A stretch of 64,000 bases of DNA from Klebsormidium nitens (Eukaryota > Plantae > Klebsormidiophyceae): contig DF237223.1 in assembly GCA_000708835.1 (NCBI GenBank), positions 51,269 through 115,268 of the forward strand. The letters are read 5' to 3'. Shown here one piece after another: positions 34,690 through 61,400 of this stretch (position 1 is the first letter of the stretch; the number at the start of each line of letters is the position of its first letter). Under the pieces are notes generated by a model. It did not search any database, was not told the DNA's origin, and saw only the letters and a program-made list of their open reading frames with translations. The position numbers and the translations under genes are program-made.

Positions 34690-35390
34690 AGTGGTATGGT
34701 TGGTCTCCCACTCTCACAACAGTGTACCAGTGATGTTTACTTTTCCTTAGACTCCAAATGCCCACGAGTGGGTACACTCCATTGTAAGTGGTATGGCGGG
34801 TCTTGATGGGATATCGACCCCATTCACATAGTGTACCCAGTGATGTTTACTTTTCCTTGGACTCCAAATGCCCGTCAGTGGGTACGCTCCATTTCTGGTG
34901 GTATGGCGAATCTTGATGGGATAATCGTCCCCATTCACATAGTGTACCCAGTGATGTTTAGTTTTCCTTAGACTCCAAATGCCTGGCAGTGGGTACGGTC
35001 CATCAATTACAACGGAAATATGACCTGGCGTCCCCATTCACATAGTGTACCCAGTGATGTTTACTTTTCGTTAGACTCCAAATGCCCGTCAGTGGGTACG
35101 CTCCATCAATTACAGCGGAAAGACGCCGTCGGCCAATTGCTTTCTAGATTTTTAATGCCTGGCAGTGGGTACGGCCCATCAATCACAACGGAAATATGAC
35201 CTGGCGAGGTCGAACGTTGTTGACAGGTACCCGCTGTCGGCCGATTGCTTTTTAGATCCTTAATGCCTGGCAGTGGGTACGGCCCATCAGTTACAACGGA
35301 AGTATGGCGGCGTGGTTGTAGGTCGTTGACGGGTACCCGCTGTCGGCCGATTGTTTTCTAGACCCTTAATGACTGGCAGTGGGTACGCGC
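34690..35390 (-). repeat. Palindromic cassette array A (7 units, opposite orientation to arrays B-E)
   Basis: (C/G)AGTGGGTAC arms at 34766, 34876, 34987, 35090, 35163, 35271 and 35377, with partner arms GTACCCAGTG/GTACCCGCTG upstream. Period is 103-111 bp, with one 73-bp unit that lacks its left arm. Confidence 0.9.
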
Positions 35391-35622
35391 CATCAAACGC
35401 AACGCAAAAGGTGTTGGAATGGTCGTTGCCAAGGGACCGACTCACAAAAAGGGCTTCCCGTAAACTTGATATATTTTGAACGAGGCGCTTTTACTCGCAG
35501 GTCACTTGAAATGTGCAAATGTCCGTCACAAAGAGCCCTAGTCACAACCTTCCGCACACGGCGTATCTCGAGATCCTCGAAGCAGTCTTATGGCGTGGGG
35601 TCATTACCTACAAGCCGTGAGG

Positions 35623-36315: not shown

Positions 36316-36789
36316 ATGGACCATTCAACGTTGCTCAAAGCTTTCGAAGACGTCACGAGCACCGTGCTACTCGCCTCAACCACTCCAACAGCCTCAGCCA
36401 CCCTGCACGAGACCCTGAAGGCCGGTCAAGCCGTCAGAAGGTATGCGGCAGTCCACTTCCACGGCCCGGCTCCGGTCTTTGACGACATCAGAAGCGTTCC
36501 GGCGGCCGTCCCTCCGTTGCCAAATGCTGGGGGCGTGCGAGGGGGCCGCCCCTCCTATGTGGCCAAGCAAGGAGGCGCCGACTTTGCGTTTGACTACGGG
36601 CTCGCATTTAGTCTGCGGCCTGCAGGGGCCTTTGCACGGGGCGGATTCGGTTCAACGTGCATCGAGCGCACGTGCGGCGGAAAGGGGTTAGTTTATGCTC
36701 GAGGGTGCGATCCTTTCATCTGGGAGCGGAAACGAAACCGGGGCGGGGCCCTAATTTGCCGAGGCGGTGGGGGGCATCTTTTGTGCTTG
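36316..36789 (+). CDS. Hypothetical ORF running into the assembly gap; may be the N-terminus of the KDZ gene
   Basis: Open frame from ATG 36316 (MDHSTLLKAF...) to the N-run, on the same strand as the downstream transposase. Confidence 0.3.
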
Positions 36790-37241
36790 NNNNNNNNNNN
36801 NNNNNNNNNNNNNNNNNNNNNNNNNNNNNNNNNNNNNNNNNNNNNNNNNNNNNNNNNNNNNNNNNNNNNNNNNNNNNNNNNNNNNNNNNNNNNNNNNNNN
36901 NNNNNNNNNNNNNNNNNNNNNNNNNNNNNNNNNNNNNNNNNNNNNNNNNNNNNNNNNNNNNNNNNNNNNNNNNNNNNNNNNNNNNNNNNNNNNNNNNNNN
37001 NNNNNNNNNNNNNNNNNNNNNNNNNNNNNNNNNNNNNNNNNNNNNNNNNNNNNNNNNNNNNNNNNNNNNNNNNNNNNNNNNNNNNNNNNNNNNNNNNNNN
37101 NNNNNNNNNNNNNNNNNNNNNNNNNNNNNNNNNNNNNNNNNNNNNNNNNNNNNNNNNNNNNNNNNNNNNNNNNNNNNNNNNNNNNNNNNNNNNNNNNNNN
37201 NNNNNNNNNNNNNNNNNNNNNNNNNNNNNNNNNNNNNNNNN
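36790..37241. other. Assembly gap (about 450 N)
   Basis: Run of n characters. Confidence 1.
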
Positions 37242-37453
37242 NCACAGATAAGCTTGGCTGCATCGAACGGCGAAGCCGAACACAACTTATCCTGAACGGT
37301 AACATCGGCTCACTGAAGCCGATCCATCCGGGATATTACGGCGTCTTGCAGACAGCCACGCAGTGCGTCGTTAAGACGTAACCACCGCCGTTTCGCTAAC
37401 CCGCAGGTCAACGAAATCCTGTCGAGAACGAGGTTAGGCTTAACCAGTCGTAA

Positions 37454-40400
37454 TCGTTACACTTGCGGTGCGTGGAGGCCGAGTACGAAGCTGGGCGCCC
37501 CTTTGTTTCGAGCGCCACTGGACGCCCCGTTCCTCAGCAAGAGCTCTTTACCAAGTACGAAGTGTTTCCAGAGACGTCGGAGCTTCAGGAAGTACGGTCA
37601 CGGGAGGCGGCAAGCGAGGGCGGCTACCAGTTCTTTGTCTAGAGGAGGGACCTCGCCTCGTGTTTGTACTGCCGCGAGTCAAAGGCACACAGTGCTCTCT
37701 CGAGGCGCGGAGTCAAGAGGGCGCTCGAGGAGGGGCCGAGCCCACGGGAGCTCGGCACGGTGGCCCTCCTCTCGGAGCTCCACCGGAGCAAGATCCCTCC
37801 AATCGCCGTTGCACCCGGCCTCTTCCTCGTGCCCCTCCTCGACGCCCGCACTGGGCGCCTTCTGGACATCTCTGCAACGGAGCGGGGTTTTGTCACTGTC
37901 CCACGGCTCGTCAAGGTCGACCACACGGGCAGCTTTCAATGCCTCTGTAGTCAGAAGGCGTGCCGGGACACGACATGTCGTTTCTGGAGGCGACGCGTCT
38001 TATGGGCGGCTGGTGGCAGGGAGGGGAGGCCATCTTCGGCCTTTGACGGCAGCAGATCGTTCGCGCGGGAGGTCACGCACGGCGTGCCTTGGGTATTGCC
38101 GTTGGAACAAGGGGGGTGCGTGGGAGGTGTTCTCTATGGGCTAGACGCATTTGCGTGGAAACGGGGCCCGCACCTCCGAGTGATTGTTGCGAGCAACCCC
38201 GGAGAGGAGCCCGTGGTTTGCGTGCTTGGAGGAGAGGTTGCGCACTGTAGCAGTATCAACTGCACGGGTCCTGAGCGGTGCCGGCACCTGTTGAGTGTGC
38301 TCTCGGAGCAGAACTTGCCTCTGATCGAGCGATGAAGGCAAGAGCGAGGCAACTCGGGTTTATGCTGAGAGACGCGCCGAGAGGGTTGCACAGCGAGAAG
38401 CGGGGGCGAGGAGGCTCTTGGTCTGCAACGATCCCTTTTGCCGGCGGCCGGACTCAAAAGCTGCATGCACGCACCGAAGGACGCTGGAGTCGTGGGAGTG
38501 CCTTCCGGCGGCAGCCCTTGACACGGGGCACAGCCACAAGAAGGTCGATACGGTCATGAGCCGGGGTGGAGGGAGCGTCGCGAGCCTCTGTGAGCGATGG
38601 GGCGAAGAGGGGGTGCGGCAGCGAGATAAGGCAGAGCACTTTTGCGCATCTCGACCTTTGGATGCGCTCTCTCCCTGCGGCCGCCCATGGCAGGTGAAGA
38701 GCAAGAAGGGGGTTCTGACGACGGCGGGAGCACGCTACGAGGTCACAACCTATCGGAGGGTTTGTCGGCTAGCGCCGGGACGCGAGTCAGCTTGTTGCAT
38801 GGTAGCCTACGACGGCCGGGTGAGACATAACATCGTCATCACACGGACTGATTCGTTGATAAAGAACGGATTCCTTGTACCGCTTGTACGCTGCTTCAGA
38901 AGGTAAAGGAGCATTGGCCTTGAGGTAGTCAATGTTGCACTTGGCTTTGACAGCGGGCGGGTAGTCTGGTTCGGACCACAACAATGAATACTTCAATGGA
39001 GACTCCAAGGGCACCATACGACGGAGAAGTGAGAGTTGGTGAATCGCTTCCTCCCAAAAGACGCACTTGGATTCTTCCTCGGGGCTCTCGAGCTTTGCTC
39101 GAAGGTCAATGCACTCTGGTAGATTGAGACCAGCTAGTACGGCTTGCGTCTAGAAACACCTCCCCAGGTTTGCAAGGTCCTCATAATGCTTGACGAACCT
39201 TTTCCTCCGTTGCATTACGACCTTTGTTTGTCGAGCTTCTTGAGCCTCACGAAAGCCCACCGGACCTCCTCGCTCCCGGATAGCAAGCACACGTACGTCG
39301 ACTTCCCGATAGTAACGGGTTTGAACCGTGTTCAAAGGATGAGAGGTCCACTGAAGCGGAGTGAGGTCTTTTATCTCGTACTTCTTTCGTGCCTCGGTTG
39401 TGGTCAGGCAATCAAGTGCGCTGTGCAGTCCAAGATCCAGACATTTTAGACATGTTGGCAACCCTTTGTGGGGGTGCATGGGCCATCGCAGATCAGTCCA
39501 CGCACTGCTGCATATTGCGCAACATTCTTGCGGCAAGATCGACTCGACGTAAAGTGGGCCGGGTGAATTGTTGCTCGAAAGCGGAAAGTCGTGCATCATT
39601 GTTCCGATACCAGCTTGAGTATCTTTACAGGTACAGGCTGAAGCGGCCAGATCTGGAAGATTGAGCAAGCCCTCCTGACCGACAACACTCAAAGCGGAGG
39701 CAAACTTCTCGTTTAAAGACATCGTCTGCTGTAGTCAAGCCTTGGAAAGAATGAAGGCTCTCCTGAACGCATATCCACGATGATGTTGTTCCGTTTTGCA
39801 GGAGGACGGCATCTTCAACTTCTCCGGCACCAACCTCATCTCGCACGGACTCCTCTTGCGCAACCACTTTGCCGCAGCTCTGGGGGCGGCCCACAGTCTC
39901 AACTTTGAGGCCGGTGACATGGCGACAAGGTGCCTCGAGGGGCCTAGCGTTTCTAGGATGGACGACCGGGTCTTCGACTCGGCCATGCAAGCCTTCAACG
40001 ACCTGGCGGCACGGCCTCGGATCCAACACGTCTGCTCGCGTGTCGACTGCGCGCACTTGTACACGAGCGAGGTGGAGGCGGCCGAGGCGGAGGCCCAAAC
40101 GGCTGGCAACTCTCTGAGGCCGGAGCGAACGGAGGGGGCGAGCTCCGAGCTGGCCACATATATTTTTGGGCGGGACAAGGTCATCACCTTTGATGGCACC
40201 TTCTTTGCCAACTCGAGTGCGATGAGGGATTCCAGCATCGAGGCATCCTTGCACAGCATCTGCGAGCCCGATCCGAAAGCGCCGAGGGTGGCTGGGGGCT
40301 TCACTCCTCTGAGCGTGGGCGGGGTGCGGCCATCTGACGTGCCGCTGGAGGGAATCGACTGCCCTTGGAAGTACCGGAACGGCCTCTCAGAGCTACGGCC

Positions 40401-41888
40401 GGCCGTGCGGGCGCTGGCCCTTCGTTGGTGCAACTTTCGCAAGGCCCCGGCCCACGGGAGCAACGCGCCTCTGACGCCGGACGAGTTCGTGGCCATGCGG
40501 GAGGAGCTTCCGGCCAACGTTGCCGCTCTGGTCGACTTTGTGATCGAGTCGGGGGCTTGTGCCAATCCCACCACGTGTGCGGTCTGCCTGGGGGTGCCAC
40601 GGCGGCCGTGGATGCAAGGGTTTCTCAAGGAGGGGCCCGTGGGGCCGACCGGCTGGTGCCCCACGCACTTCCAGCCATACGGAGCCCTCCTCCACGCGCT
40701 GCTCATCCCTCGCTACTCCTGGGTGTTTGGGCGCATCGTCACCCTGAAGTTGCTGAGACACGTGTTGCTGGAGGGTCCTCTCGATGCGCGAGGGATGGCA
40801 TTTCTCTCCAATGACGGCCCCATGCTAGCGGCCGTCCTGCGCCTCCATCCAGTTGCCGGCGGACAGTACGCATTTCCAGCAACGCTGCGGCCGCTCGTGC
40901 GTGACATCTATGCCACGAACCTCCTCTGCTTCGAGCCCAGCGCAAACCGGCCGGGTCCAGCCTTGCGATCGCCACTGGCCGCCCTCCATGATGCGACCGA
41001 GCACCTCTGGGCAATCGAAGGCGAGAAGCTGAGGCTTGCGGGTCAGCTAGAGGGGGCGGCCATGGAGTATGCCGAGCAACGTGGGGCGGCATTGAAGGGG
41101 GCTGCCAACTCGCTTCTGTTCGAGCTCGAGGTTTGAGAGCCTTTGTGCTACGGAGAGGGCGGCTTCCTTCAGGCGCCGTCGGCGGCCTATACTGAGCGGG
41201 TCGGCGCCGTCTCGTCCTACTCCTTTCACCCCCTGCTGTACGGCCGGCCTCGGTTCGTCGACTGGGAGGACGAGGAGGGCCGGGGGAAGAGGGGGTCAGA
41301 GGAGCGCCCAACCCAACATTGCAGTGCGCCAAACCCTCTGTCATCAAAAGGGCGGGCCGGGATCTTCATTGCGTGCTGCCAAGACCGGGCGCCCCTTGGG
41401 TACCACTGGCTGAAGGGGACCGAGTCGGTGTCGGACCTTGGTACGGTGCTCCTGACGCGGTTCCATTCAAGACGCTGCGGGGCATGACCGTCGTGGAGGA
41501 CGCTTCGTGCAACGCGCAAGAGTGGTTGCTGAACCGGGTGCCCTCGATGGCCAAGTATGTCTGTTTTGTTGTGGACAGATTCCATAGTGGGCCCGTGAGC
41601 TGCGCGCGGTCTGGCGCGAAGCGCTACGCGACGCACACGTGTGCCCCGACACTCTTCATCGACTCGTTCCCACAACACAGCCACACGATCACGACGGCCT
41701 CGGAAGGCATCAACTCGGGGCTAAAGAGATGCGCGGCCAGCCTCCAGCAGATCACGAGCATCAAGCGGCTATTGAGCAGGGTTACAACGATCCTCGACAC
41801 GTTGTTTGAGCGATCAAAATACGCAGTGTATTGGAGCAATACTAGCAATCCTTTGAGAGACTCGATCAAGAGGGGGCGAAGTCAATGA
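37454..41888 (+). pseudogene. KDZ (Kyakuja-Dileera-Zisupton)-type transposase with SWIM-like and CxC-type Cys clusters; disrupted
   Basis: SWIM-like CSSINC..RCRH. CCMVAYDGR|EDGIFNFS is joined by a GT-AG intron at 38820-39801. Catalytic-type motifs are VITFDGT, GIFIACC...GYHW...ESVSD...LLTRF, VVEDASC...LLNRVP, FVVDRFH and ASEGINS. Stops at 37640 (TAG) and 41134 (TGA); frameshifts near 38328 and 41463. Confidence 0.75.
38787..39722 (-). pseudogene. XPA/Rad14-like Zn-finger plus C-terminal-domain protein, nested antisense in the transposase intron; one in-frame TAG at 39150-39152
   Basis: CAIC-x17-CLKC followed by LTTTEARKKYEIKDL...RYYREVDVRVLAIRERGG...EARQTK...RRKR resembles XPA (CxxC..CxxC..ITKTEAKxxYLL..KLYL..V...A...WG..E.R). 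ORFs 39150-39722 and 38787-39017 share one frame. Confidence 0.6.
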
Positions 41889-41898
41889 GGTTGTTCTG

Positions 41899-42456: not shown

Positions 42457-42468
42457 GCTATTTGGTAC

Positions 42469-45294
42469 TCAATCTCTTTGGAAAGAATCATCTTCTGGCC
42501 TTTCTCGAGTCTGTACTTTCCCGTCCTCACCTCGTCTCACTTCCCACATATGACGGTTGGAGCAGAACGAGCATTTTTGATCCGCAACGGTTTTTCGCGA
42601 CCTTCCCAAAGCATCAACCAGCTCTTGAAGAGCCGTCGGTTCCGTCATCCATGGGCCTTCCTTGTCTTCCACGTACTCGAGTCGTTGCCAGGTATCAACC
42701 CACTCCACGGTCGAGCTCAGAAGCTTCCCTTTGTGCAGGGCCTCGCAGATAGCGCCCTGTGGGGCGAACCACCATCCCTTGTGGGTTCGAACCTTCTCAA
42801 TGGAGCGTGCCTGCGGTCGCATCTTGAAAACGGCATTTAAAGAGCGCATCAAGAGATTAATGTCGGTATGGCGGTCTTCTTTGATGTCCATCTGATGCAA
42901 AAATGTGTCATAAGTCCGCTTGATGTCCGCTGATGCTACCCACGTCTCCAAGGACGGGTGAAAGCACCCGTTCTCAAGCAACGCTTGCATCATGTTGACA
43001 TGGGGTGGAATCGAATGTTCCTTTAGGCCTTCCCCCCAAGCTGTAATTGGCATCTTTTGAGGATTCCAGTCGGAGATGTCAATGGATGAAAGATACCGAT
43101 ACATGTAATATGCGGTCATGGGTTTTTCCAACTCTTCCACAAGTGCATCAAAGTACTCTTTGTCGCCCATTTTGGTATCTGATACTTGCTGACAAGAGTA
43201 TCGTCGGTCGTCGGCCTCCCGTTTCACTGGCGAGTAATTATTGGTCGTAAAAACGAGGTTGCTCTTGTCCTGCACGCTGATCGGATCTTGGCCTTTACGC
43301 TCCAAGCACGTCGTCTCCTGAGTGATTTGCGACTTCATCCGATCATTCATCCGGAACGCCCCTCCCCAATTTCCTGCCTCGTCAAAAGTAATGAGAAGCT
43401 TATTGGCTCCCAATGAATTGAATTTTCCAATGACCGTGTCGATGTTGTTGCAATAAAGATAGTACTTGGCACCAAGAATCTCGCGTCCAATGAAGTCCCA
43501 CACTACAGACTTTCCGCACCCTTGCCCACTGCGGAAAACAAGAGCCACTCCAACCTTCCTCCAAGGCTTCTGCACGGCGTGCGCCATCCAACTGATGTTA
43601 TCGGTGAATCGTTCGTTTGAGCCATCGCACACGATGTTGCGAAGGTGCCACATAAGCTTTGGCATCTGTACCTCGCACTCCATGAACTCCGCCTCCGTCA
43701 ACTTGTGGTCGAGCGGTTTGAATCTCAGCCCGGAAAACAGATTGAAATGTCGCGGGGACCCCTTTGATGGGTCCGGCTCGAACACGATCTGATCGTATTC
43801 CCGCCGCTTAGGGTTGCTCTCCCAAAACCTGGCAACCTCTTTGTTCTTCCCAGGTAGGCTCTCGAGCTGGAAGTTTCTGCAGACCTCCAGAAAGTCCCGG
43901 CCGGACCGATGGATGGTCTCGTCGGACTCAAGCTTCCCGTTTGCGTCTCTTGAGTAGATTGTCTTTAGGTAAACCGCCTTTGTCGAACGCACAACGGCAA
44001 AGTAATGGTTCATGATCTGCAAAGTGAGATCGTGTAAGTGCATCTTTGCTCTCTTTGTTCGCTCGTCATCTTCCTTGCTCTTCTGTTTCCCGACGCTTTC
44101 ATCTGCGGGCGGCACAAAGGGGAAAATGTAGCTTTCGCAAGTTTTGAAAAGTTGTCCTTCCGCTCTCAAAGGCAAACACTAGGGCCAAAAGTACACGCCT
44201 AGCAAAGGCTTCGGTCGATCAATGCAATCCGGAGACAGACAACGGTACACGAAGACGCACCCGTTACTCAAGACGCTGAATTGATTTGAATGGTGTTGGT
44301 GGCCGTTCAAGCACGTTCGCGAGCCGTTGGTTCTAAACTTGAGGATCTGCCACCCGTTCGGGGTCCTTTTTCCAACGCCATTGAAAATGCTAGAGTCGCC
44401 TGGCACTCTAGCACGCAGCAACCTCTCAATCTCTTCACGCGCTTGTTCCAGTCCCGGCAATTGATTCCATTCCGTATCAGGACGTGCGGTGCTACATGGT
44501 GCCGCATCTTCTGCTCCGGGTGTTGACATTGGAGCTTGTGGCTTTGCAATTCGTGGTTTCTCATGGAACGCAGCGTCGTTCAAGAATTGGACCAACCAGT
44601 CTGGCATCCCATTGCGAGGTGCCGTTTCGTCCGATCCGCTCCAATGGTAGCCATACTCTCTTCCCGCTTCGTCAAAGTACTTTGAGGGAGAGGCATAAAC
44701 TATCCCATCCCGGCCTCTTCCATCCAAGGCCCATGTGCACCCCTCGTAAACGACCGTTGCAAAGTTTGTATCTTTGAGCAGACCAGAGGTCTTGCTTCGG
44801 CTAAAATATATGTGCAATCCAAATCCCAATCCAGTGGTTGCCTTTAGGGTCTCAACGGCTCCGTGCTGCTCCACCAATCAACTCCAGAGCATTGTGCCTG
44901 CCTCTTTGCGCCCACCCTCATCCTTTGAAGATCTTGCGGTGGCATCGCAATCGACGACATAGAGGTCGGATACGCCACAGAGCACCGCCAGAGCATTAAC
45001 ATCCAAGGCGGCCTTGTTTATGTAAGAGTTGATACCTTTCTTCCAATCTGCTAACGACTTTGTCAACGGGGTATAATTGCCACCACTGAAGCTTGTTTTC
45101 TTCTTCCCTGCAACAATTTCTAGCCGGAGCGGGATGGTGTACATGCCCTGTTTATACAGAGATCGCATGCCTTCAACGATACAATACTTGTGCTGAAAAC
45201 GTGATTCGACTGGAGCATCAGGGCTGGGCTCGTAGAGCTCGCCGTCTTCGGTGATGAGCCTGAGCCTCTTAGGGCGTTTCAAACGCGTGCTCAA
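42469..45294 (-). pseudogene. Bifunctional primase-polymerase (Prim-Pol) + Zn finger + NrS-1/D5-like SF3 helicase; 942-codon frame with 2 internal stops
   Basis: NALAVLCGVSDLYVVDCD, TTGLGFGLHIYF, LDGRGRDGIVYASPS, MPDWL, then CLNGHQHHSN..YRCLSPDC. Helicase motifs: FNLFSG, Walker A SGQGCGKS, Walker B LITFDEAG, motif C FTTNN and DDRRY. In-frame TGA at 44878-80 and TAG at 44179-81 split one frame. No introns. Confidence 0.85.
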
Positions 45295-45322
45295 ATTTTC
45301 TCACCACGATAGTAATAGCGGG

Positions 45323-45706
45323 ATGAAAATGCACAATGAATCGGCATTGAACGACAATTGTGAATGCGGAACGTGCTTGTCCGTTAAGCATTTCTATGAA
45401 AGGCATCCAAACGCTCGAAAGACTTACACCCGACGGCATTATTTGAAACATAGAGACAGTATCCTCTTGACACAAGCATTTGAGCGCTATATGAACGGAC
45501 ATGCATCTCAACAAAGGACTTTGAAGCGGCTCTTTGAAGCAGGCTTTCCAGTTAAGATTTCAAAACGTGCATGGCATCATGATGATCCGCCAATAACGCT
45601 CTCTCCCAATCATGACGTGCCTCAAACGGCGTCTTGGAGCATGCCAGATAATGCCACCGCGTCAGCTTTTCCTTTGGGTGCATACACGAGCATCGAAGTA
45701 TCCTAA
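45323..45706 (+). CDS. Small hypothetical protein with a CECxxC and a basic YTRRHYLKHRDSIL segment
   Basis: ATG ORF filling the space between the Prim-Pol and recombinase genes. The basic/aromatic stretch resembles small viral DNA-binding ORFs. Confidence 0.35.
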   Translation: MKMHNESALNDNCECGTCLSVKHFYERHPNARKTYTRRHYLKHRDSILLTQAFERYMNGHASQQRTLKRLFEAGFPVKISKRAWHHDDPPITLSPNHDVPQTASWSMPDNATASAFPLGAYTSIEVS

Positions 45707-45753
45707 AAGGATTTGACAGAGGTGTTGAGCGAGTGGAGAAATGTGCATCTTCG

Positions 45754-46797: not shown

Positions 46798-46853
46798 CTT
46801 CAATTTTTCTAGATAATGCAGATAAATTTTCAACAAGACAAACGCTCATCTCC

Positions 46854-48134: not shown

Positions 48135-48394
48135 TCATCAGCACAAACCCTTTCCCTAAGTACGTACGGAACCCTCGCCGAGCTCAGTGAAGAAGCGGGC
48201 CCCACCATGCTTTACAAGCACAAGGTCTCTATGATCGTATGCATACTATCAGCTTCGTTCAGTTTGGCTTCTACAACTCCAGTGAACGATGCTTGTTACA
48301 TGTGCAGTCTATAGAGAGTAATTAACACCGCGTGGCCCATCCGACAATGATCCGAGACGACCATACCCATCACAATCCCGATTTATGATTGACT

Positions 48395-48740: not shown

Positions 48741-48911
48741 ATGTGCAAAGGGGGGGTGGTGCGTGATTTCGAATTACAGAAGCATCCGCTAGTTGTTGCA
48801 TCCTAATGAGCACTCGGATTACAATTCAACACCTCGTGTGTGCCTTAGGGCAATAACTGATGATGATGTGAGCAGCCTGTGTAGCCTCAGGATAAATACC
48901 TTAAAGGCCTG

Positions 48912-51900: not shown

Positions 51901-54900
51901 CAACAGAGGAGCTTACCTCTTCTGGTCGTCTGACAGCTTCCGGGGGCTCTGCTACCGTGCGCTCCGAGGACAGCCCACCTCTAGAGGCCGCGGCCTGCAG
52001 GAAGGGAAAGAGAACAATTCAAAGGACCTCACACGCGTTCCTTTAAAACAGCTGGAAAGATGAACGCCGAATTGGCAGTTGAATGGAGGTGTGCGCCAGA
52101 TTCTTGAGCCTGCGATTGAAGTTGGCCTTGGTCGATCCACCGACCTGCTCAAAGGGAAGACCCAGGCTCTCGAAAGGGACGTAGACAGCGTCCTCCACCA
52201 GCAGGGAGATGCCCCCCTGAGCGTAGCACAGGATCAGGGGCCGCTCGACGCGTCGCACGCGCAGAGAGGCCTGCCACAGTGCCCGGGCCGTCGTGCTCTT
52301 GAGGCACATGTACAGGTACATTGCGTGGAACCAGTCGTGGTCAAAATTGACCCCGGCCTCGATGCTGGGGCTGTACATGAGGAGCCGCACTTTCCAGTGC
52401 ATGCCCACGTTCTCCAGCTTTCGCATGTCGTCGCCAGAACTGAGGGCCGTATGCACCAAGATGTCGCGCTCCTCAAGGAGCCCCAACTCGAGAACGCGCT
52501 CCCGGATGCTGTTAATCGCATTGGACGACATGCTTGCCACCGCCACGTTTCGCCCTTGCCGGAGATCCTCGAGCAGCTGAGCCTGCCAGGCGTTCGCATC
52601 ACTGCACACCCGGTAGGTCCGGGGCACGGCCGCCCCTCTATCATTGATGACCAACTTTCTGCGGAGGCCTGCCATCTCAAAGAAGTCGTGCTCTCGTTGC
52701 GCATAGCCGTCATCCAGAGCGAGAACCCTGCGGGCGTTCGGGATCAGCTCAAGGAGAAATTCGCTGGTTTCTTGCCCGCGGCGGAGAGTGCTGGAGGAGA
52801 GATGGGCCAAGATGCTCGCAATCTCGTCTACGACCACGAGGTCAAAGGGAGGCACCGGGCCGAAACCGTGCGGCCGAAGCTGGAGCAGACTGTCGACCTG
52901 AACGACGATGTGAGGAAAGAGCTGCCGGTTCTGCAGAGCCGTAAGACTCCACTGCCTGTCAGGGCTGTCCCAACGCTGGTGTTGAAAGTCCGCTTTAAGA
53001 TCGAGGTAGTTGCGGAAACCAGGAAAGCGCTCCTTCAAATCCTTTGCCTGGGCTACGCGGTACGAGATGAAAAGGATTGTCGGAGGACGCCCAGGGTGAG
53101 CACCATTCAGCTCGTGGTAGATGAGATGGCTGGTGAGGCCGGTTTTGTTGGTGCCGACAGTGGAGCGGATGGAGAGCAAGGGGAATTCCGGGACCCAGTC
53201 TCCTCCCAATGAGGGCGGAGACCCAAGCCACCTGTGGAGAAGAGCAGTGGAGTGTCGGAGGACTCTCGAAGATGGCACGACTTGCAGCATATCTCCTTGC
53301 AAGAAAGCCTGGCGTCAGAGCAATCTGGACCCTTAAATTTGGCATCAATTGGCTAGCGGGCGCGTACATCGCAGCCAGACAACGACAACGACGATATGAG
53401 CACGAATGGACTGGTGTTCCGTTCTTCCATCCGCCCCACGAACCGAATTGAAACATAAAAGTTCGACAACCCGAGAACCTAGAAACCCAAGAGAAGCTCT
53501 TCAGCAGACAGGTTTTACCTGGAGGAGAAACGGGAAGACGGGCCGCCTTTGAAGGAGCAAAAGACGTGTTCAAATTGCCTGTCCTCCTGCCAAATTGCAG
53601 ATTGCAATAGTAGAACACTTACTGGTCAATGACGGCGTTCAGCTTTAGCTCGTCAGTTGGGGCAGAGCGCCCCGCTTCCACCGCCGCCAGCTTCTCAGGC
53701 GAGCTTGCGTCCTTGTTTCTCTGCAGAAACGGCACGTCGATGACGACTGCCCCGGCTCGGAAGGTCTCCTCCTCCTCGTACAGGTTGCCCAGAAAGAAGG
53801 CCTTCGAGCGACAGGTGTCGCTCGTGTGCCCCCCCTCCGGGTTCACGCTGAAGCAGAGCGCAAAGATCCGGTTGCCGTCTGGTCCCAGGTGCAGCGTGAG
53901 GTTTTGGTTGTTGTCATGGAGACGCCCGGTGTAGCAGGGCTCCAACCGGTCGGTGTAGTTGTACCGGTCAGGCCCCTCGCGGTATGCGGTGGGGTGCAGC
54001 TTCTCACGAAGAAGGACCAGCATGCGCTCCCGAACGAAGTCGGTGTAGCGCTCGCCCTGCGCTCCAAGTTCTGTCAGCGCGCGCGGCCCTTGCGGCGCCC
54101 GGAGTGCACGAGGCAAGCCAGCGGGTACGACGCACGGCAATTTGATGACCTGCCGCGCCTGCCAAGGGAACAAAAGAGGGTCAGGTCTCCACTTTGTGCG
54201 CATAGGTGCATTGAAGCGCGGCCAAGCATATAGCAAACGCTGAGTCGATCGTCGCACACCACTTTTCTGGTCAGAACGCTCTACAATCTGATCCGAGGAG
54301 CACCTTTTTAGCCGGGAACTCAAAGCAGAATTCTGAGTAGAGCGGACAGGACCAGAGAACTTTAAGCAGCCCTCACCTCGCCGGAGGCAGCCTGTTGTCA
54401 GCCGAAACGAAAGACAATTGGGCAATTGAAGACAAGGACCACCTTTTTGAACGGATACATAAAGAAGACTCCTAATTAGAGCAGACACGACCACAGAAGG
54501 GGCAGACCTCGGCTTGCTGACGGCTTGCAACCGAAATGAAGAAAGTCGGACGGTTTGGAAATCGGTCAAGGCTGAAGCTGCAGCTGCCAAGACGGTAGGA
54601 AATCAGGCGGGAACCTTCGAGGAAAGTGACTGCTTTTCAAAACAATCACAGTCGCTTCTTGAAGGACGAAACAACCGCTTACCCTCGGAGGCTCGAGCCA
54701 CGTCACCAGTCCGTCCCGCCAGGTATGCGCCAGGTTGATGAACTGCAAGGTGCTCTCAGGTTTCTCAACCTTTGAGCACCCAGGGGCGCGCCAATCCCGG
54801 TCCTTGGAGTAGACGCTCAGGTCGATCATCGCCGCCAGATCCGGCGACCACGGCTTGATCTTCTCCTTCAGGCGCTCCGCCAGATGCTTCGCCCCGTCCT

Positions 54901-55432
54901 CGAGATTTGAAGCAAAAACGAACTGGGGGGAAGGTGTGCTTATGACCAGGTGCAGGCTGAACTTTGTCTGGTTCCCACTTGTCAGCCAGACGAAGCTCTT
55001 GCTCGGCAAGGTCAGCCCATAATCGGACTCAAAGCGCGAAGAGATCCACTCTTCCAAGGCGCGAATCACTGCCTCGGTGCTCATCTGCTCCCTGACTCCG
55101 TCGGCTCCGGTCCTGAAGGGATGCCCGTCCTTGCCATCTATGTCCAAGTACGGCTTGCACGGGAAGCCGTGACGGACGATCTCAAAGACGTGCTTATGCC
55201 CTTGAAGATGGGGCTCAGCAATTTCCCAGCTTGGGTACGAGGCAAAGCTGCGGTAAGGGATTGGCCGACCAAGCTCATCGAGCTTCTGAGATGGGGAGTG
55301 CAACACGACCTGCGCTTCGTGATTGAAGAGGCTGGCATGCTGCTGCATGAAGTGCTTGGGACCTGGCAGCGACTTATCCTCCTTTGAGCTTGTCGCATGG
55401 AACAGGGTCGTGCCATGCTTTGCCTTGCGCAC
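48912..55432 (-). CDS. Multi-exon AEP primase - Zn finger - UL9-like origin-binding SF2 helicase - C-terminal domain fusion (core part)
   Basis: Exons: AEP up to donor 54683, Zn exon 54158-53623, helicase 53308-52145, short phase-0 exons 51994-51956, 51451-51341, 51129-51049 and 50600-50535, and last exon 50126-48912. The junction between the Zn exon and the helicase exon is unresolved. Confidence 0.65.
50760..50920 (+). repeat. Palindromic cassette array C (2 units), intronic
   Basis: GTACCCACTG 50769 with CAGTGGGTAC ending at 50822 (54 bp); second unit 50864-50916. Confidence 0.85.
52145..53308 (-). CDS. Herpes UL9/NCLDV origin-binding-protein-like SF2 helicase exon
   Basis: LLSIRSTVGTNKT (variant Walker A), ILFISYRV, IVVQVDSLLQL, FDLVVVDEIASIL (Walker B), VLALDD, LLMYSPSIEAGVNFD and WQASLRVRRV. 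This motif order is typical of the Herpes_ori_bp family. Confidence 0.8.
54683..55432 (-). CDS. AEP (PrimPol/herpes UL52-like) primase catalytic exon
   Basis: HVFEIVRHGFPCKPYLDID (motif I DxD), KFSLHL (motif II SxH), MIDLSVYSKDRDWRAPGCSK (motif III); donor AGG|GTAAGC. Confidence 0.85.
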
Positions 55433-55449
55433 AACGCTGTAAGCCCCGG

Positions 55450-58400
55450 ACTTGAAGACCTCGTTTCCAGTGCAAGCTTCAGATCAGGGCGGGCGGAGGC
55501 ACCCGTATTCCGTCAAAGGAAGCGCTGAGGTCAATCAGGCTGGGCGCTGCGGCGACTCGAGTTGGCGCTGCTGCTGTTGGGGTCGGTTCTTGGACCGGCT
55601 CTTGCTCTTGAGCCTCGGCTCCGTCGCTGCGCAAAATTACAAAGAGAGCCGTTAAAGATTGCTCCCACAGCAGAAAAGCGATTAAAACTAATCAAGAAGC
55701 TAACCCACAACTACATGTGAGCATATGCAGAGGCAATCTGACACAATCTGTGGTCAGAAACAAAGAAACAAGGCACACTGCCAAGAATTGTAATTGAAAC
55801 ACGGTTCTTGATCATTGCTGAAGGACTTCATTGATTGCAGCAACTTCAGTGCTCATACAGTGCTCACATAAACATCAGCAGAAACAGAGTAGAGAAGACC
55901 AGGGGGTGATGGCAAAAGCTCACGTTTCCAAGGTCTCCAAAGCTTGAAAATCTGCAGCAAAGCCATGTCGAGTAGGCGGGGAGGGGGTATCGTGTCGAGC
56001 TGGAGAGGAGGGTGGGCCGAACGTCTCCTCCTCTCGGGCTGCCAAGGTAGCTCTTTGCTGCTGGCACTCCCCAAAGAAATCAGCAACCACCCGCTCCTTC
56101 ATTGCCCTGCGCCTGCTGCGACGGCTGCCCGTGGCCTGCTCGGACAAATCGCGTGCGACTCCAGCTCCTGTAGGACAGAATTGTGAAAAGATTATGATCC
56201 GGGTTTGGAGTAGTAAAGGTTCTGACGGGCTCAGGGAGCTTTTGAAAACTCTGAGGAGAAGCATTGCAAAGGTGTTTCGAACTCTTCTTTCACGCTCGTG
56301 CGCTCGCTCAGGCCCTTTGGCATCCGCGATTCCAGCACCTGCGGGACGAGTCCTGGGGATTTTACATTTTGGGCTCTTTTTGAGATGTGAACGGGGCTGC
56401 AGGTCGGGGCAGAGGAGCAGGACATCAAGGAGCTTTGACCAAGAGACGGCTTTTCAAGACCGAAGTGAAAAGAACAATCCTTCTTTCTCGCTCGCTCAGG
56501 CTGCTCATCTTATGAAGCACTGAATTATCCAGACTATCCAGAATCGACACGGACTTGCTGTAGTTCGCAACCCAACTTTGACCGCGAGTCGTGGCCGCTG
56601 CGAAAGTAAGCTACTCGGACACACTTTCCGAACCCACCCACAAGCTCTGAGGAGCAAAGCGCCCTTTGACAGGGATTTTAAATCTAATCGACCAACCAAC
56701 GTGAGTACTTCTTTTCAAGAAAGGCCAGGGCGGTGAAGCCACGGATCTGCATGCTGGTACCTGATTGGCTGAGAAACTCGGCGTTTCGATGAGGAATTCA
56801 AATCCCCCTGTAACGATAAGCAACTACTATCTTGGGCTAACACGAGACATTACTTAACGTGCTGTCCACCCCCCAGCGCCCTCACCTGCAGCTGGTCGAT
56901 CAGCAGGTTCTGCTCCTGCTTCTCCTTCTCCATCTTGGAGACGGCGTACGTCGTGCGCCGCGTGACCACGATCTCGCCCTTGACCCGCTCCTCCACCTGG
57001 CACAGCGTCGCCCCCAGCCGGTCCAACTGCTCCGCGCACGCGCTCCTCCAGGTCTTCACCGCTGAGCACGAGCAGAGCAAAGGTTGCATCATCTCATGGA
57101 CCACTAACGAGTTCTGCACAAACGATTGCTTTTAGGCGGCACGATGTCAATGTCTGTTGCACGGCAGGTCCGGCTCGTTGATGAGTGGCTTGACACGCAT
57201 TGCGTGTCCCAAAAAGTCAGCGCATGGGCTCACCCGATGCGAGAAGCGACTGTGCCTGCAGCTGGCTCGGCCGCAACGCCGCTGGTACTCTCTGAGACTT
57301 TCACGAGTCTTCTTCTTCTCTTCGAAGGGCCAGCTACCGGAGACACCTGCATAACCCTCTTTAATATCAGTACAAAGATCACGCATGAACAGACTCGGAG
57401 AGGTCAAATTGGCGGTCCATCTCAACGATTCGATCGCAAAGCGTAGATCACACCCTGCGTAGCTCGTACAGAATGAGGTACACTGAGCGCGAAGGAGCCT
57501 GACCCGCTCCGACAGCCTCTTAGTTCCTCCACTCGATGCGGGCGCGTTCATTTGAGCTTCGGCATGTGCAATCAAGGCCTCGAGCGCGGCGCCTACGTCC
57601 AGCCCCCGGGTTGCTGTCTGCAAGCTCAGAGCGAGTTAGCCTCCATCAAGGACTGCCCAGGGAAGTAACGGAAGGAAATGGGGGTTTATGAGATGTGACA
57701 AGTGAAGCGGGGGGAGGGAGGGGGGCGCGTGTTCAGGACTCTCGACTCTCAACCCGACATGATTGACCTATAGAGTTGACCCTGACATGTTTTGGTCAAC
57801 CAGACCTGCAAATCTGGCGCCAGATCCCCTAAACCCTTGAAAATTGCAAGCCAAAAAGCCTAAACTCCTAAAGATCATAAAACCTTGGACCCTAATCACA
57901 ATTGACCCGAAACTCGAGTCACGTGCAATTCGACCCTAAGCTACAACATGGATCCTAATGATGACGGGTAAAAGGGGAGTCAGATTCGCACTCAATTTCG
58001 TGCTCTAGCGACATGCAAAGCGAATCTACAATTAAGCAAAGGGCTGGGCCACACACTTCGTGAGGGATTTGCGTACCTCAGCTCCTAAAGCACCTTTGGA
58101 AAAGTCGGTCAGAGGCGGCATGGGCAGTTCTGCTGCAGGGGGGCCGTCAGCTGTTGGCAGCGCCGCGGCAGGTGCTTCCTGCGCACCATGCAAGGTCGAC
58201 AGTTGTGAGTGAGCTCTAGCTCGCGACCATGGGGCCAACCGAAGGTTGCTTGCACGATTGAAGACAAATTTCAGCCGTCTGGCAGCCGGCAAGTGGTTCC
58301 CAAGGTGGGTGGGCATCCCCAATCCCACTTAGAATGGCGCGTACCCACTGGCGAGCATTGGGATTCTTAGAAAGAGATGGCCGGCAGTGGGTACACCGAG

Positions 58401-61400
58401 CAGGAAGTGCCCAGGCTGTCATGTCTGTCAAGTCCCCACTAGAACGCATTAGGATACTCAAAAAGAAATGGCCGACAGTGGGTACACCAAGCAAAAAGCG
58501 AAAGGCCAGATTTGTGAGAACGGCGCGTACCCACTGGCGCACATTGGGATTCTTGAAAAGAGGTGGCCGGCAGTGGACCGTACACCAAGCAAAACACGGA
58601 CGGCCAGATTTGCGAAGACAGCGCGTACCCACTGGCGCGCATTGGGATTCTTCGAAAGAGATGGCTGGCAGTGGGTACGCTTTAGGTGTGCACCTGTAGG
58701 CGATTCTCAGAAACCCGTGAAAAGTACTCGTCAAAGGACTTCAAAAGTTGTCATCACGTGCGGCCCCCACACTCGAGCCAGAGCAGTTCTCACCATCACT
58801 TCGGGAGCCGCTTCAGTAGGGGCAGCCGACAACAATGGCTCTGTCAGCTGGAGTGCATCAGCCGTGCCGGGGGGGCGCAGGGGGCGCTTCTGCAACTCTG
58901 CCGGCGGGTTCGATCTGCGCACAAGCGAGACAAGCGCAGATGGGCATAAGTACGGCTTTCTGTCGCAATTTGCCAACTCGAAACGGACAGAGCGAGCATG
59001 CACGGTACAGAAAAAGAAGATTCGTACGCAGAGGTTGATGACAAGTCCATACTGCGCTTACTCGCTTTCGCGCATTTGGTCTAATTTTGGGCGCAAGGGC
59101 AAACCTTTGAAGGGACTGGCGCATAGATCCTGAAGAACTGACGAGTGGCAGGACATACCTGCGGATCCGAGGCGTGTTCAGGTAGAGCGGCGGACTGGAG
59201 CGGCTCCGAGGTAGGGGGGGCGTCAGCTGTTGGGAGAGCCGGGGAGGGTGCCAGTGCAGTGCCGCCCTGCGCGTGCGCGAGATGGCCGGCAATGAGTCCA
59301 GATGGAGGGAAAGAGTGACGACCATACCACCCGTCATAGAGCGTACCCACTGGTGGTCAATATGAGTCTAAGAACCAATTCGACAGCACTAGGTACACTG
59401 TGTGAAGGGGCGACGGCCATCCCAGGCAGGATAGAGCGTACCCACTGGCGGGTATTAGACTCTAAGAATCAATTCGTCAGTGCTGGGTACACTTGCAAAA
59501 AGGCCCTGTCGACGGCCATACCACCCGAGATAGAGCGTACCCACTGGCCGACGTTTGAATCTTATAAAGAATTGCCCGCCAATGGGTACACCATACCAGA
59601 CGACCATGCCCCGCAAAAGCTGCTTATACCTAATTGAGCATACCCACTGCGAAATTCTAAGAACGACGAAGAGGCCAGCACTGGGATCATGTGCGCTCAA
59701 ACTACGAACACTTGAGGCCAACGTTTCCACTCAGAAGCTGCTGAGGGCACTCGACACTGACCTGCTCGCCGTCCGGCTCGCCGCCGCCGCCTGACACAAG
59801 CAGCTGCTCCAGCTCCTGGGGCTGGGCCGGCTGGTCTGCAGAGCGGGTTGATGCCTCTGCCCCTTGATTGCGGTTCTGTGCATGAGAAAAGAATGTTCAA
59901 TTGCGACACATAGAAAGGTGCAAGTTTTGCAGTGCGCACGAGCACCATCAATCAGAAAATGCCACAGGCTTGAGGAATCATGCATGCAAAAGAACATTGC
60001 TGTAGACAAAGGCCATACCGACGAGCATTTACCTTCTTCCACTCTTCGAAGAAGCGCTGAGTGTCAGGAGGTTTTGGCCGGGCACTCTCCTGAACCTCCT
60101 GCATGACGAGGATGTCATGAGTGTTCGACGCAATCACTTTCGCTCTCACATACTCGTGAACAGTGACACGAGTGCATTACATGGGAGCACGTGACATGGC
60201 TCTCAGTTTACCGATAGATCGCTGCTTACCTGCCACGGCGGAATGTGGAACTTGGGTCCTTCTGCTAAGCCACTTGGGGTGTACGGCTTCTGATACATTC
60301 CCGGGTTGCTCTCAATTCCCCCAATCATGAGGAGGGTGTCTGCATGGCAGTGACACAACGCTCAAAAAGTGGACACGAGGATGCCCCACGGCCGACAGAT
60401 TTTTGATGCAGGTTTGGCAACATATGCTATTGGCAACATAGCGTGGGATGCCATGCGGTGACTGCGAAACTCTATCCAAGTCCTCACCTATTAGACCCTT
60501 GGTCAGTGGACCTGACGACCAGAACACCTCGGACTCGCCCCAGTAGGCCGGAGAAGCTACAAGAGCGGAGAAGAGCGGAATGGTCAGTCACAAGACTGAC
60601 TGACGCCGCTGATCATTCAATACGGGGCGTATGTAAGTAGGTATACTCAAGTTCAGTGGCTGAAAGAAAGTTAGGAAACAGCCCGCTGCATGCCCACTGA
60701 AAGAAAGTTGGAACACAGCCCGCTGCAAGCCCAAAGCAGGGGCGCTCATCTGAGTTGCAGTAATCTGGCCCAGCATCTTACCCGGCTTTGGATGTCCGAA
60801 AGGAAAAACATGCGCCTTCCCCAGCACCGCCAGATTCTAACACGAGATCAGACGTCGTTGAAAGGAGGGTTTGTCGCTCACCTTGCAATGCGCTCCTCAC
60901 CAGCACGCTCTTCGTGGCAGTCGGCTGAACCCCAAACCTGGCGCTCCCGCTTAAACAGCGCGCACAGGCCTTGTGCGCCGTGGACGGGAGGCTGCCCGGG
61001 CTGCGCCTCGTCATTGGCGGTGTGCTGATGGCAGGCTGCGCCAAGATCGCAGTCCGAGTGAGAGTCGCTGGCGGTCGCACGGGGGACAGTTGCGGTGGGA
61101 CTGTGCTGGGCACTGCGGTCAGCGCACGCGGACTCTGGAAAGGAGGCGCTCAAAGGGGTCAGATGCCAGCAGGGAACCTGCAGTAGTCCTCCGAATCGTG
61201 CGACATGTCAAGGGCATGCACTCTGCCCCGGCCATAGCTGACAAGATCTGTGTATCAAGAAACACCCATTAAAATTCTTAACAAGCAAGAGGTGGTTTCT
61301 TGGTACACGTCCGTGATAAGCTGCAGAGTTGACGTTCCACAAAACGTTCTTCCTTGGAACACTGCTTTTGGGGCGCCGCTTGGAAGACCTCCCAATGTTG

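What the first reader, a model, noticed from the sequence alone, without database searches (positions are those of the whole stretch)
34690..59690. Five dispersed arrays of a fixed-length palindromic cassette around a UL9-like origin-binding gene: candidate multi-origin replicon
Seen: about 21 units in 5 arrays (A 34.7-35.4 kb, B 48.4-48.7, C 50.8-50.9, D 58.3-58.7, E 59.3-59.7). Each unit has 10-bp inverted arms GTACCCACTG...CAGTGGGTAC. In the units measured the cassette is 53-54 bp, while the 33-34 nt interior (AT-rich core, e.g. ggattcttagaaagagat, gactctaagaatcaatt) and the inter-cassette linkers diverge. None occur in the 34 kb of host genes. B lies about 170 bp past the stop of the AEP-UL9-like gene, and C, D and E lie in its predicted introns. 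Known: HSV UL9 binds inverted boxes flanking an AT-rich spacer in oriS, and baculovirus hrs are dispersed tandem palindromes that act as origins and enhancers. Inference: conserved arms and spacing with a free interior suggest a dimeric protein-binding site. The adjacent primase/origin-binding helicase is the obvious cognate, making this a possible undescribed self-amplifying algal element.
Basis: partly seen in the sequence, partly recalled or inferred. Interest (0 to 1): 0.9.

Follow-up and report, generated by a model that had tools for sequence, protein, structure and literature searches.

The report
Palindromic repeat arrays in algal element
The green alga Klebsormidium nitens carries many partly decayed copies of a roughly 30-kb element built from giant-virus-type replication genes. 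Its non-coding stretches hold arrays of a 54-bp palindrome laid out like the origin/enhancer repeats of baculoviruses, but what binds them is unknown.

Summary
There are 21 units in five arrays at the stated places, plus two single cassettes at 61.25 and 62.07 kb. None lie in the 34 kb of host DNA, and none in 1.2 Mb of giant-virus contigs.

The units are tandem repeats of 95-110 bp. Each holds a 53-54-bp imperfect palindrome with an AT-rich core. Array A is inverted relative to B-E.

The window is K. nitens scaffold DF237223 and ends at the scaffold end. The arrays belong to an element of at least 28 kb. It encodes a primase-SF2 helicase of the mimivirus R8 / ASFV pF1055L type, a D5-like primase-helicase and two unknown genes.

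Eleven related loci (seven in K. nitens, four in metagenomes) keep the gene order in whole or part, and nine of them carry cassettes. Cassette length and array positions are kept, but the arm sequences differ (four classes). Complementarity is preserved by changes on both sides.

I read them as hr-like cis-acting repeats: origin, enhancer or both. The link to the UL9-like protein is unproven. Its C-terminal domain shows no convincing likeness to the UL9 DNA-binding domain, and two arm classes coexist in single elements. This copy is also decayed: three of its genes carry breaks.

The parts
34719..35408 (-). Array A: 7 tandem units in two subfamilies, period 103-110 bp, inverted relative to B-E. 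It lies about 0.9 kb upstream of gene g1.
48388..48743 (+). Array B: at least 4 units, period 96 bp, holding the 20-N gap. It ends 173 bp past the stop of the AEP-UL9 gene, on the 5' side of the primase-helicase gene. Its arms are partly decayed.
50760..50923 (+). Array C: 2 units in the intervening sequence between the helicase and C-terminal coding parts. L001, L007 and L002 carry cassettes at the same position.
58334..58684 (+). Array D: 4 units, period about 95-98 bp, in an intron between the N-terminal exons and the AEP domain.
59335..59692 (+). Array E: 3 clear units and 1 degenerate unit, period about 95-99 bp, in the same intron region as D.
61250..61313 (+). Single cassette with arms of another class (class II-like), in an intron between N-terminal exons.
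62069..62135 (+). Single 55-bp cassette with class II-like arms, in the first intron.
48912..62717 (-). AEP primase / zinc region / UL9-like SF2 helicase / DUF8368 gene, with introns. Domain ORFs: AEP 54569-55483, zinc region 53622-54602, helicase 52046-53314, C-terminal domain 48915-50153, N-terminal exons within 60230-62717. There are no stops or frameshifts inside the four domain ORFs. One substitution sits at a near-invariant P-loop position.
42469..46632 (-). D5-like / NrS-1-like primase-helicase gene (Prim-Pol + DUF5906), KFL_002740170. It has two in-frame stops relative to uninterrupted relatives.
38556..41885 (+). Gene g2 (KFL_002740165 and downstream ORFs). It is the most conserved protein of the element (81-87% identity between lineages for the 450-aa ORF) and its function is unknown. 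It has one in-frame stop and one frameshift relative to uninterrupted relatives.
36316..38335 (+). Gene g1, function unknown. It is interrupted once by an insertion or misjoin that holds the 453-N gap.
34188..34325 (.). Conserved non-coding block on the outer side of array A, 77% identical to L008:20658-20796. It marks the minimum left extent of the element.

Best explanation
The arrays are hr-like cis-acting repeats of a multicopy endogenous element family in Klebsormidium. The family is built around giant-virus-type replication genes.

Each unit carries a 53-56-bp imperfect palindrome: two inverted arms about 44 bp apart, centre to centre, around an AT-rich core.

I propose (inferred) that a dimeric or oligomeric factor docks on the duplex palindrome. 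The factor is most likely element-encoded. I propose that the AT-rich core is the region that melts.

I also propose (inferred) that the arrays serve as origin, enhancer or both. They sit on the 5' side of each transcription unit and in introns of the AEP-UL9 gene.

Shown: the arrays are specific to the element; cassette length and array positions are conserved; arm pairing is kept through changes on both sides; the far-end array is inverted.

Inferred: that a protein binds, which protein it is, and the origin/enhancer activity.
For: Specificity: 20 of 21 units plus 2 single cassettes are found by profile. There are 0 hits in 34 kb of host DNA and 0 in 1.2 Mb of giant-virus contigs.

Same architecture in other copies: L001, L002, L004, L005, L007, L008, L093 and L094 carry cassettes of 53-56 bp with invariant GTACC...GGTAC ends and different arms. 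L095 and L004 carry a fourth class with AGTCAAAA...TTTTGACT arms, 57-59 bp.

Pairing: 71.6% of cells are paired, against 34-39% when the partner is slid. 92 cells show changes on both sides, against 33-47 when slid.

Positions kept: a far-end array upstream of g1 in the window, L004, L008, L093 and L095; an array between the AEP-UL9 gene and the primase gene in the window, L001, L004 and L095; cassettes between helicase and C-terminal domain in the window, L001, L007 and L002.

Orientation: the far-end array is inverted relative to the B-like array in three lineages with three arm classes.

Composition: the core is 68-73% AT and the arms 41-51%.

Location: cassettes never overlap annotated coding segments.

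Genes: two primase-helicases are encoded.

Precedent: baculovirus hrs have the same design, 64-bp repeats each with a 24-bp imperfect palindrome, and act as origin and enhancer (PMC4535591).
Against: There is no binding or replication evidence of any kind.

No relative of baculovirus IE-1, and no recognisable DNA-binding domain, was found in the element's ORFs.

Two arm classes coexist in single elements. This fits selection for pairing better than sequence-specific recognition.

Half-sites 44 bp apart are far for a simple dimer.

Array B units have decayed arms (fold z-score -0.3).

This copy is decayed, so its arrays may be relics.

Orientation relative to the gene is not uniform in L005 and L008.
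Confidence: 0.45

Rival explanations
1. Each cassette is a UL9-type origin. The C-terminal domain of the AEP-UL9 protein binds the two arms as a dimer and the helicase opens the AT-rich core, giving a multi-origin self-replicating element.
For: The gene is a true AEP + UL9-like helicase. Its C-terminal domain is the most divergent part between lineages (34-41% identity, against 81-87% for g2), as the arms are. Cassettes sit in and around this gene in every lineage.
Against: Similarity to UL9 is confined to helicase motifs. The C-terminal model (pLDDT 75.7) has no match among solved structures and only a faint hit to a herpesvirus UL9 model. Arm classes coexist in one element. The D5-like primase-helicase is an equal candidate. 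The window copy has an altered P-loop position and three other broken genes.
Confidence: 0.2
2. Selfish or neutral repeats. A foldback or MITE-like minisatellite family colonises and expands by unequal crossing-over in the non-coding DNA of these elements, with no role for the element.
For: Units within an array are more alike than between arrays. Positions inside the AEP-UL9 gene's introns differ between lineages. Array copy numbers vary. Arrays break the assembly: a gap lies in B, and L004 ends inside an array.
Against: Array positions and the inverted far-end arrangement are kept across lineages whose arms have been wholly replaced. Cassette length is held at 53-59 bp. Pairing is kept by changes on both sides. 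No target-site duplication is seen at cassette ends. None occur in host DNA in hand.
Confidence: 0.2
3. Single-strand hairpins. The palindrome acts as a stem-loop on one strand. On unwound DNA it could be a primase or helicase loading signal, like plasmid single-strand initiation sites (recalled from memory). In intron or leader RNA it could be a processing or small-RNA signal.
For: Selection appears to act on pairing rather than sequence, and four arm classes exist. Most cassettes fold far better than shuffles (z -2.3 to -7.5). Wobble-type mismatches are twice as common on one cassette strand (67 against 38). Two primases are encoded. Arrays on the two sides of the g1-g2-primase block face opposite ways.
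Against: Stems are short (10-13 bp solid) with loops of 20-30 nt. The wobble asymmetry rests on related copies and could be a mutational strand bias. No RNA family matches, even at E up to 10. Orientation relative to the gene differs in L005 and L008.
Confidence: 0.15
4. Terminal or subterminal repeats for integration or transposition. The inverted arrays A and B bound a 13-kb mobile module (g1, g2, primase-helicase), and g2 is the recombinase.
For: A-like and B-like arrays are inverted in three lineages. g2 is highly conserved and cysteine-rich.
Against: No transposase or integrase domain was found in any ORF. The AEP-UL9 gene stays linked outside the 'module' in every copy. Further arrays in the same orientation lie beyond B. 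No copy shows a clean end against host DNA.
Confidence: 0.08

Closest known systems
Baculovirus homologous regions (hrs)
   Same: Several dispersed regions per genome. Each is a tandem array of direct repeats holding an imperfect palindrome with a restriction-site-like centre. Sequences are homogenised within a genome and differ between lineages. hrs have dual origin/enhancer roles (PMC4535591).
   Different: The units are longer (95-125 bp, palindrome 53-59 bp). The host is a streptophyte alga and the element is related to giant viruses. No IE-1 relative was found. Many cassettes lie in spliceosomal introns. No activity has been shown.
Herpesvirus origins with the UL9 origin-binding protein
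   Same: Inverted boxes flank an AT-rich centre, and a UL9-like SF2 helicase is encoded next to them.
   Different: The protein carries an N-terminal AEP primase that orthoherpesvirus UL9 lacks (10.1101/2024.02.29.582850). The C-terminal domain is not demonstrably the UL9 DNA-binding domain. There are many arrays rather than one to three origins. The box sequences were not compared, because no letters were taken from memory.
Giant-virus AEP-SF2 primase-helicases (mimivirus R8, ASFV pF1055L type)
   Same: Same domain order and a shared C-terminal fold.
   Different: Here the gene sits in a nuclear genome, carries introns and an extra N-terminal extension, and is multicopy. No origin is known for the viral proteins as far as I know (from memory).
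Bacterial REP/BIME palindromes and plasmid single-strand initiation hairpins
   Same: Short imperfect palindromes with conserved ends, clustered in non-coding DNA and sometimes in inverted pairs. Pairing is conserved more than sequence. (Recalled from memory, not tested.)
   Different: These are prokaryotic systems. No HUH or RAYT-type gene was found here.
Foldback elements / MITEs
   Same: Palindromic, repeated and confined to non-coding DNA.
   Different: No target-site duplications. Arranged as tandem arrays with homologous linkers. Confined to one element family, at conserved positions.

Membership tests
Herpesvirus-type origin / UL9 system | Initiator with a UL9-like SF2 helicase core | tested here: met
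   Pfam Herpes_ori_bp 1.9e-13. UL9 structures 1.8e-5 for the ORF and 1.7e-38 for the family profile. One near-invariant P-loop position is altered in this copy.
Herpesvirus-type origin / UL9 system | C-terminal sequence-specific origin-binding domain homologous to that of UL9 | tested here: not met
   The profile match covers UL9 residues 90-242 and 348-412 only. The best fold match among solved structures has E 0.38. The viral model library gives a herpesvirus UL9 only at E 7e-3, TM 0.24.
Herpesvirus-type origin / UL9 system | Origin made of inverted initiator boxes flanking an AT-rich spacer | tested here: inconclusive
   The architecture is present: inverted arms, core 68% AT. Box sequences were not compared and binding is untested.
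Baculovirus-type hrs | Several dispersed regions, each a tandem array of direct repeats with an imperfect palindrome | tested here: met
   Five arrays, period 95-110 bp, palindrome 53-54 bp.
Baculovirus-type hrs | Cognate IE-1-type dimeric binder encoded by the element | tested here: not met
   No such family appears in Pfam scans of the element's ORFs.
Baculovirus-type hrs | Origin and enhancer activity | not testable with these tools
   No functional data available.
Giant-virus AEP-SF2 primase-helicase (R8 / pF1055L type) | N-terminal AEP with catalytic motifs, zinc region, SF2 helicase and shared C-terminal domain, in that order | tested here: met
   hhalign of the four window ORFs to the family profile: 3.7e-40, 1e-21, 1.4e-64 and 2e-20, in order. 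PrimPol and poxvirus D5 primase hits. D.D and S.H motifs present. The C-terminal fold matches Bodo saltans virus, Indivirus, Samba virus, Marseillevirus and ASFV proteins.
D5-like primase-helicase | Prim-Pol domain followed by a DUF5906 / D5-type SF3 helicase with Walker A | tested here: met
   Pfam DUF5906 2e-18 and Prim-Pol 9e-4. Primase chain 6k9c 7.8e-11. Walker A present. Two in-frame stops in this copy.
MITE / foldback transposon | Target-site duplications and dispersal through the host genome | tested here: inconclusive
   No duplications at cassette ends. None in window 1-34000, and none in the flanking, non-element parts of L002 and L006. The whole genome could not be scanned.
Known RNA families (including 5S rRNA, snoRNA, miRNA) | Match to an Rfam covariance model | tested here: not met
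   No hit at gathering score in the window. Only chance-level hits at E 2.5-8 on arrays D and E, and none on A. No tRNA.

The most novel reading that the evidence does not exclude
These could be a new class of eukaryotic selfish element: intron-bearing nuclear replicons of about 30 kb or more, derived from giant viruses, with no polymerase or capsid gene recognised. They would persist in streptophyte algae by using their own two primase-helicases on arrays of hairpin-forming initiation sites whose stems turn over by compensatory change.
Probability: 0.12. Interest if true: 0.85.

Novelty: new variant of a known kind. Interest (0 to 1): 0.6.

Why it matters
Endogenous giant-virus DNA in K. nitens is already known (PMC5294986, PMC11244446, PMC12344493). 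I found no description of this compact multicopy element family or of its repeat arrays.

If the arrays are cis-acting sites, they would be the first origin- or enhancer-like repeats tied to the R8/pF1055L-type primase-helicase. That protein is widespread in giant viruses, and as far as I know (from memory) its DNA target is not known.

The comparative pattern gives a natural data set for finding that target by sequence and structure alone. Positions and length are fixed, the stems are replaced, and there are four arm classes.

The arrays also explain why the draft assembly breaks at these loci.

Tried and rejected
1. Derivation from 5S rRNA or another small RNA. The lead came from a linker box resembling something I recalled from memory. 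Rfam gave nothing on the arrays, even at E up to 10, and there is no tRNA. Dropped.

2. Exact-pattern scan of JGI metagenome contigs. It returned only two unrelated palindromes at contig ends.

3. Function of g2. Pfam, PHROGs and NCBIfam gave no hits, and neither did a profile search against solved-structure sequences. The AlphaFold model failed (pLDDT 33). There is no relative in IMG/VR.

4. Other ORFs: no Pfam, PHROGs or NCBIfam hits, where each was tried, for g1, the primase N-terminal ORF, 47.0-48.1 kb or 55.9-59.4 kb.

5. A generic scan for any 10-bp inverted repeat at 48-61 bp span was too noisy. I replaced it with end-anchored scans and a profile search.

6. Introner-type reading, in which cassettes define intron ends. 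Rejected, because cassettes lie in the middle of the intervening sequences.

7. Arrays D/E as the right terminus. Rejected, because homologous N-terminal exons lie further out, up to 62717.

8. Free-virus counterpart. The D5-like ORF has only a 29%-identical match in IMG/VR.

Slips, stated as required:
- In my reasoning, and in the outputs, alignment bounds next to discontinuities were worked out or printed.
Full report
OBSERVATION

The 10-mer GTACCCACTG, allowing one mismatch, occurs 32 times in the window against 2.2 expected. All but two hits fall in five clusters. Tandem Repeats Finder shows that the clusters are head-to-tail arrays with periods of 95-110 bp.

There are 21 units:
- A: 7 units, 34719-35408
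- B: 4 units plus a gap, 48388-48743
- C: 2 units, 50760-50923
- D: 4 units, 58334-58684
- E: 4 units, 59335-59692, the last one degenerate

Each unit holds a cassette of 53-54 bp (one of 57 bp) bounded by inverted arms. Only three units carry both arms exactly. Shuffled sequence gives 0-1 comparable cassettes.

Mean column shares over the 15 window cassettes in alignment A4 are 0.97 for the 5' arm and 0.89 for the 3' arm. They are 0.80 for the 8 nt inside the 5' arm and 0.56 for the core, which is 68% AT. Interiors are not free. Identity is 0.71 within arrays, 0.61 between arrays and 0.51 for shuffled interiors. Linkers are also homologous between arrays.

Array A is the reverse complement of the others. 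A profile built from cassette alignment A4 recovers 20 of the 21 units. It adds two single cassettes at 61250-61313 and 62069-62135. It gives no hit in window 1-34000 and none in 1.2 Mb of giant-virus contigs.

GAPS

The 20-N gap lies inside array B. The units on either side are 99% identical and the 96-bp register is kept (family D9). Only the copy number of B is in doubt.

The 453-N gap lies in gene g1, away from any array. Three relatives (L004, L008, L093) are continuous across this point with nothing homologous missing. The 0.2 kb beside the gap is unique to this copy. The gap is therefore part of an insertion or a misjoin, and frame and continuity across it cannot be established.

WHERE THE WINDOW COMES FROM

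The ORF at 42472-44178(-) is 100% identical to KFL_002740170 of Klebsormidium nitens, scaffold DF237223. Window position 64000 is the end of that scaffold.

The public annotation places a kinesin gene to the left, starting near 33.8 kb. It then places two unnamed genes on the + strand (g1 36316-38335, g2 38556-41136). Next come the primase-helicase on the - strand and a 1301-residue Herpes_ori_bp + DUF8368 gene at 48912-55348(-).

THE GENES

A search of 1.84 billion representatives with the helicase ORF finds 1619 relatives. Typical relatives are 1050-1100 residues long, with the helicase in the middle.

A profile of 30 relatives matches UL9 origin-binding protein structures at 1.7e-38, but only over UL9 residues 90-242 and 348-412. 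Its N-terminus matches human PrimPol (1.5e-18) and the poxvirus D5 primase domain.

The four window ORFs map in order onto this profile:
- AEP: 3.7e-40
- zinc region: 1e-21
- helicase: 1.4e-64
- C-terminal domain: 2e-20

Primase motifs are present. The family occurs in many giant-virus metagenome bins.

A model of the C-terminal domain (pLDDT 75.7) has no match among solved structures. It matches the C-termini of mimivirid, marseillevirus and ASFV 'origin-binding / helicase-primase' proteins (best E 5e-8). A herpesvirus UL9 model appears only faintly (E 7e-3, TM 0.24).

This is the architecture described for mimivirus R8, ASFV pF1055L and some mriyaviruses (10.1101/2024.02.29.582850).

Paralogue gene models begin with exons that match window 62717-62394 and further pieces down to about 60.2 kb. 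The gene therefore spans 48912-62717.

A second replication gene, Prim-Pol + DUF5906 (D5-like, NrS-1-like), lies at 42469-46632(-). No function could be assigned to g1 or g2.

STATE OF THIS COPY (COUNTS ONLY)

- g1: one insertion, which holds the large gap.
- g2: one in-frame stop and one frameshift.
- Primase-helicase: two in-frame stops relative to uninterrupted relatives.
- AEP-UL9 gene: no breaks within the domain ORFs, but one substitution at a near-invariant P-loop position, unique among 20 aligned members.

This copy is probably not active.

A MULTICOPY ELEMENT FAMILY

K. nitens has at least 13 AEP-UL9 paralogues and at least 7 primase-helicase paralogues.

I fetched eleven related loci:
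- Seven on other K. nitens scaffolds: L002, L004, L005, L006, L007, L094, L095.
- Four on metagenome contigs: L001, L008/L009, L010, L093.

They show the same gene order, in whole or in part. Protein identity to the window ranges from 34% to 94%, depending on gene and lineage.

The conserved block covers window 36.2-55.5 kb. Added to it are a 140-bp non-coding block at 34188-34325 and the N-terminal exons near 60-62.7 kb. The element is therefore at least 28 kb long and is cut by the scaffold end. All eight K. nitens copies, counting this window, touch a scaffold end.

THE KEY COMPARATIVE RESULT

An end-anchored scan (GTAC...GTAC, 50-59 bp, at least 10-11 of the 14 outer pairs) finds cassettes in L001, L002, L004, L005, L007, L008 and L093, with 0 in shuffles. 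The profile also finds them in L094.

The ends GTACC...GGTAC are invariant and the length stays at 53-56 bp. The arms differ by lineage. Examples as they stand:
- window 58341: GTACCCACTG
- L004 17796: GTACCAAAAAACG
- L008 19029: GTACCACAAAACG
- L007 12001: GTACCAAGGTTCTG

L095 and L004 also carry a fourth class with AGTCAAAA...TTTTGACT arms, 57-59 bp.

On 39 cassettes, 71.6% of cells in an 18-pair arm model are paired, against 34-39% with slid partners. 92 cells show changes on both sides, against 33-47.

Array positions recur:
- Upstream of g1: window A, L004:17530-17876, L008:17.2-20.5 kb, L093:557-1681, L095:39-1208.
- Between the AEP-UL9 gene and the primase gene: window B, L001:12019-12240, L004:5177-5465, L095:10448-11230.
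- Between helicase and C-terminal domain: window C, L001, L007, L002.

The far-end array is inverted relative to the B-like array in the window, L004 and L095, although each has a different arm class. In paralogues, cassettes lie within gene spans but never in annotated coding segments.

In the window, all five arrays have the same orientation relative to the direction of the gene they precede or sit in.

INTERPRETATION

Element-specificity, fixed length, conserved positions and pairing kept through arm replacement all argue that these are cis-acting parts of the element rather than chance or generic satellite DNA.

The design is dispersed tandem arrays of a direct repeat that holds an imperfect palindrome with an AT-rich, restriction-site-like centre. 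That is the design of baculovirus hrs, which act as origins and enhancers (PMC4535591). Inverted boxes around an AT-rich centre are also the classic origin layout.

I therefore favour hr-like docking sites for an element factor, serving as origin, enhancer or both (0.45).

- The C-terminal domain is not demonstrably the UL9 DNA-binding domain.
- A second primase-helicase is present.
- Different arm classes coexist in one element (L004, and the window's two single cassettes).
- This copy is decayed.

That coexistence, and the replacement of arms with pairing preserved, keep a single-strand hairpin reading alive (0.15). Most cassettes fold well as DNA (z -2.3 to -7.5; array B does not). Wobble-type mismatches are about twice as frequent on one cassette strand (67 against 38). 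However, those counts rest on related copies and could reflect a mutational strand bias.

Neutral selfish repeats (0.2) and transposition ends (0.08) remain possible.

NOVELTY AND LIMITS

Giant-virus endogenization in K. nitens is known (PMC5294986, PMC11244446, PMC12344493). In the paper searches I ran I found no description of this element family or of its arrays.

I could not scan the whole K. nitens genome, so confinement to the elements rests on about 50 kb of flanking host DNA and on the giant-virus control. No functional evidence exists.

Slips are recorded under 'tried and rejected'.

Noticed in passing
window 41886-42484: Two direct repeats of about 350 bp (81-88% identical) and a (GGGTAATA)x3 run at 42005-42030. 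They lie between the converging 3' ends of g2 and the primase-helicase gene.
   Followed up: no
window 63300-63950: Upstream of the AEP-UL9 gene start, at the scaffold end: a different family of short repeated palindromes (for example 63497-63537 and 63852-63892), and three TGACGTCA motifs within about 160 bp.
   Followed up: no
window 34188-34325; L008:20658-20796: A 140-bp non-coding block, 77% identical between two otherwise unalignable lineages, on the outer side of the far-end array. No Rfam match. A two-sequence fold is uninformative.
   Followed up: partly
L004:138-552, L004:4488-4545, L095:39-1208, L095:10448-11230: A fourth cassette class with quite different arms (AGTCAAAA...TTTTGACT, 57-59 bp, period about 120 bp). 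It occupies the same array positions as the other classes. In L004 it coexists with the GTACC class.
   Followed up: partly
all K. nitens loci: window, L002, L004, L005, L006, L007, L094, L095: Every copy fetched touches a scaffold end. L004 ends inside an array, and L094 has three long N gaps. The draft assembly appears to break at these elements.
   Followed up: partly
L010:768-9100: In this metagenome contig, chromodomain Ty3/gypsy-type LTR retrotransposon ORFs lie beside a rearranged copy of the element.
   Followed up: no
P0004 (KFL_005490050): A distant K. nitens AEP-UL9 paralogue model of 1693 residues also carries a ubiquitin domain.
   Followed up: no
L001:2156-2542: A histone-fold gene lies about 5 kb from the AEP-UL9 gene in the closest metagenome copy. 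Whether it belongs to the host or the element is unknown.
   Followed up: no
window 2228-2548: A run of 12-nt repeats (16 copies of a 51-nt register) inside a long ORF of the host part of the window.
   Followed up: no
window 51026-51084 and 51318-51376: A 59-nt direct repeat, 78% identical and 292 bp apart, in the intervening sequence that also holds array C.
   Followed up: no
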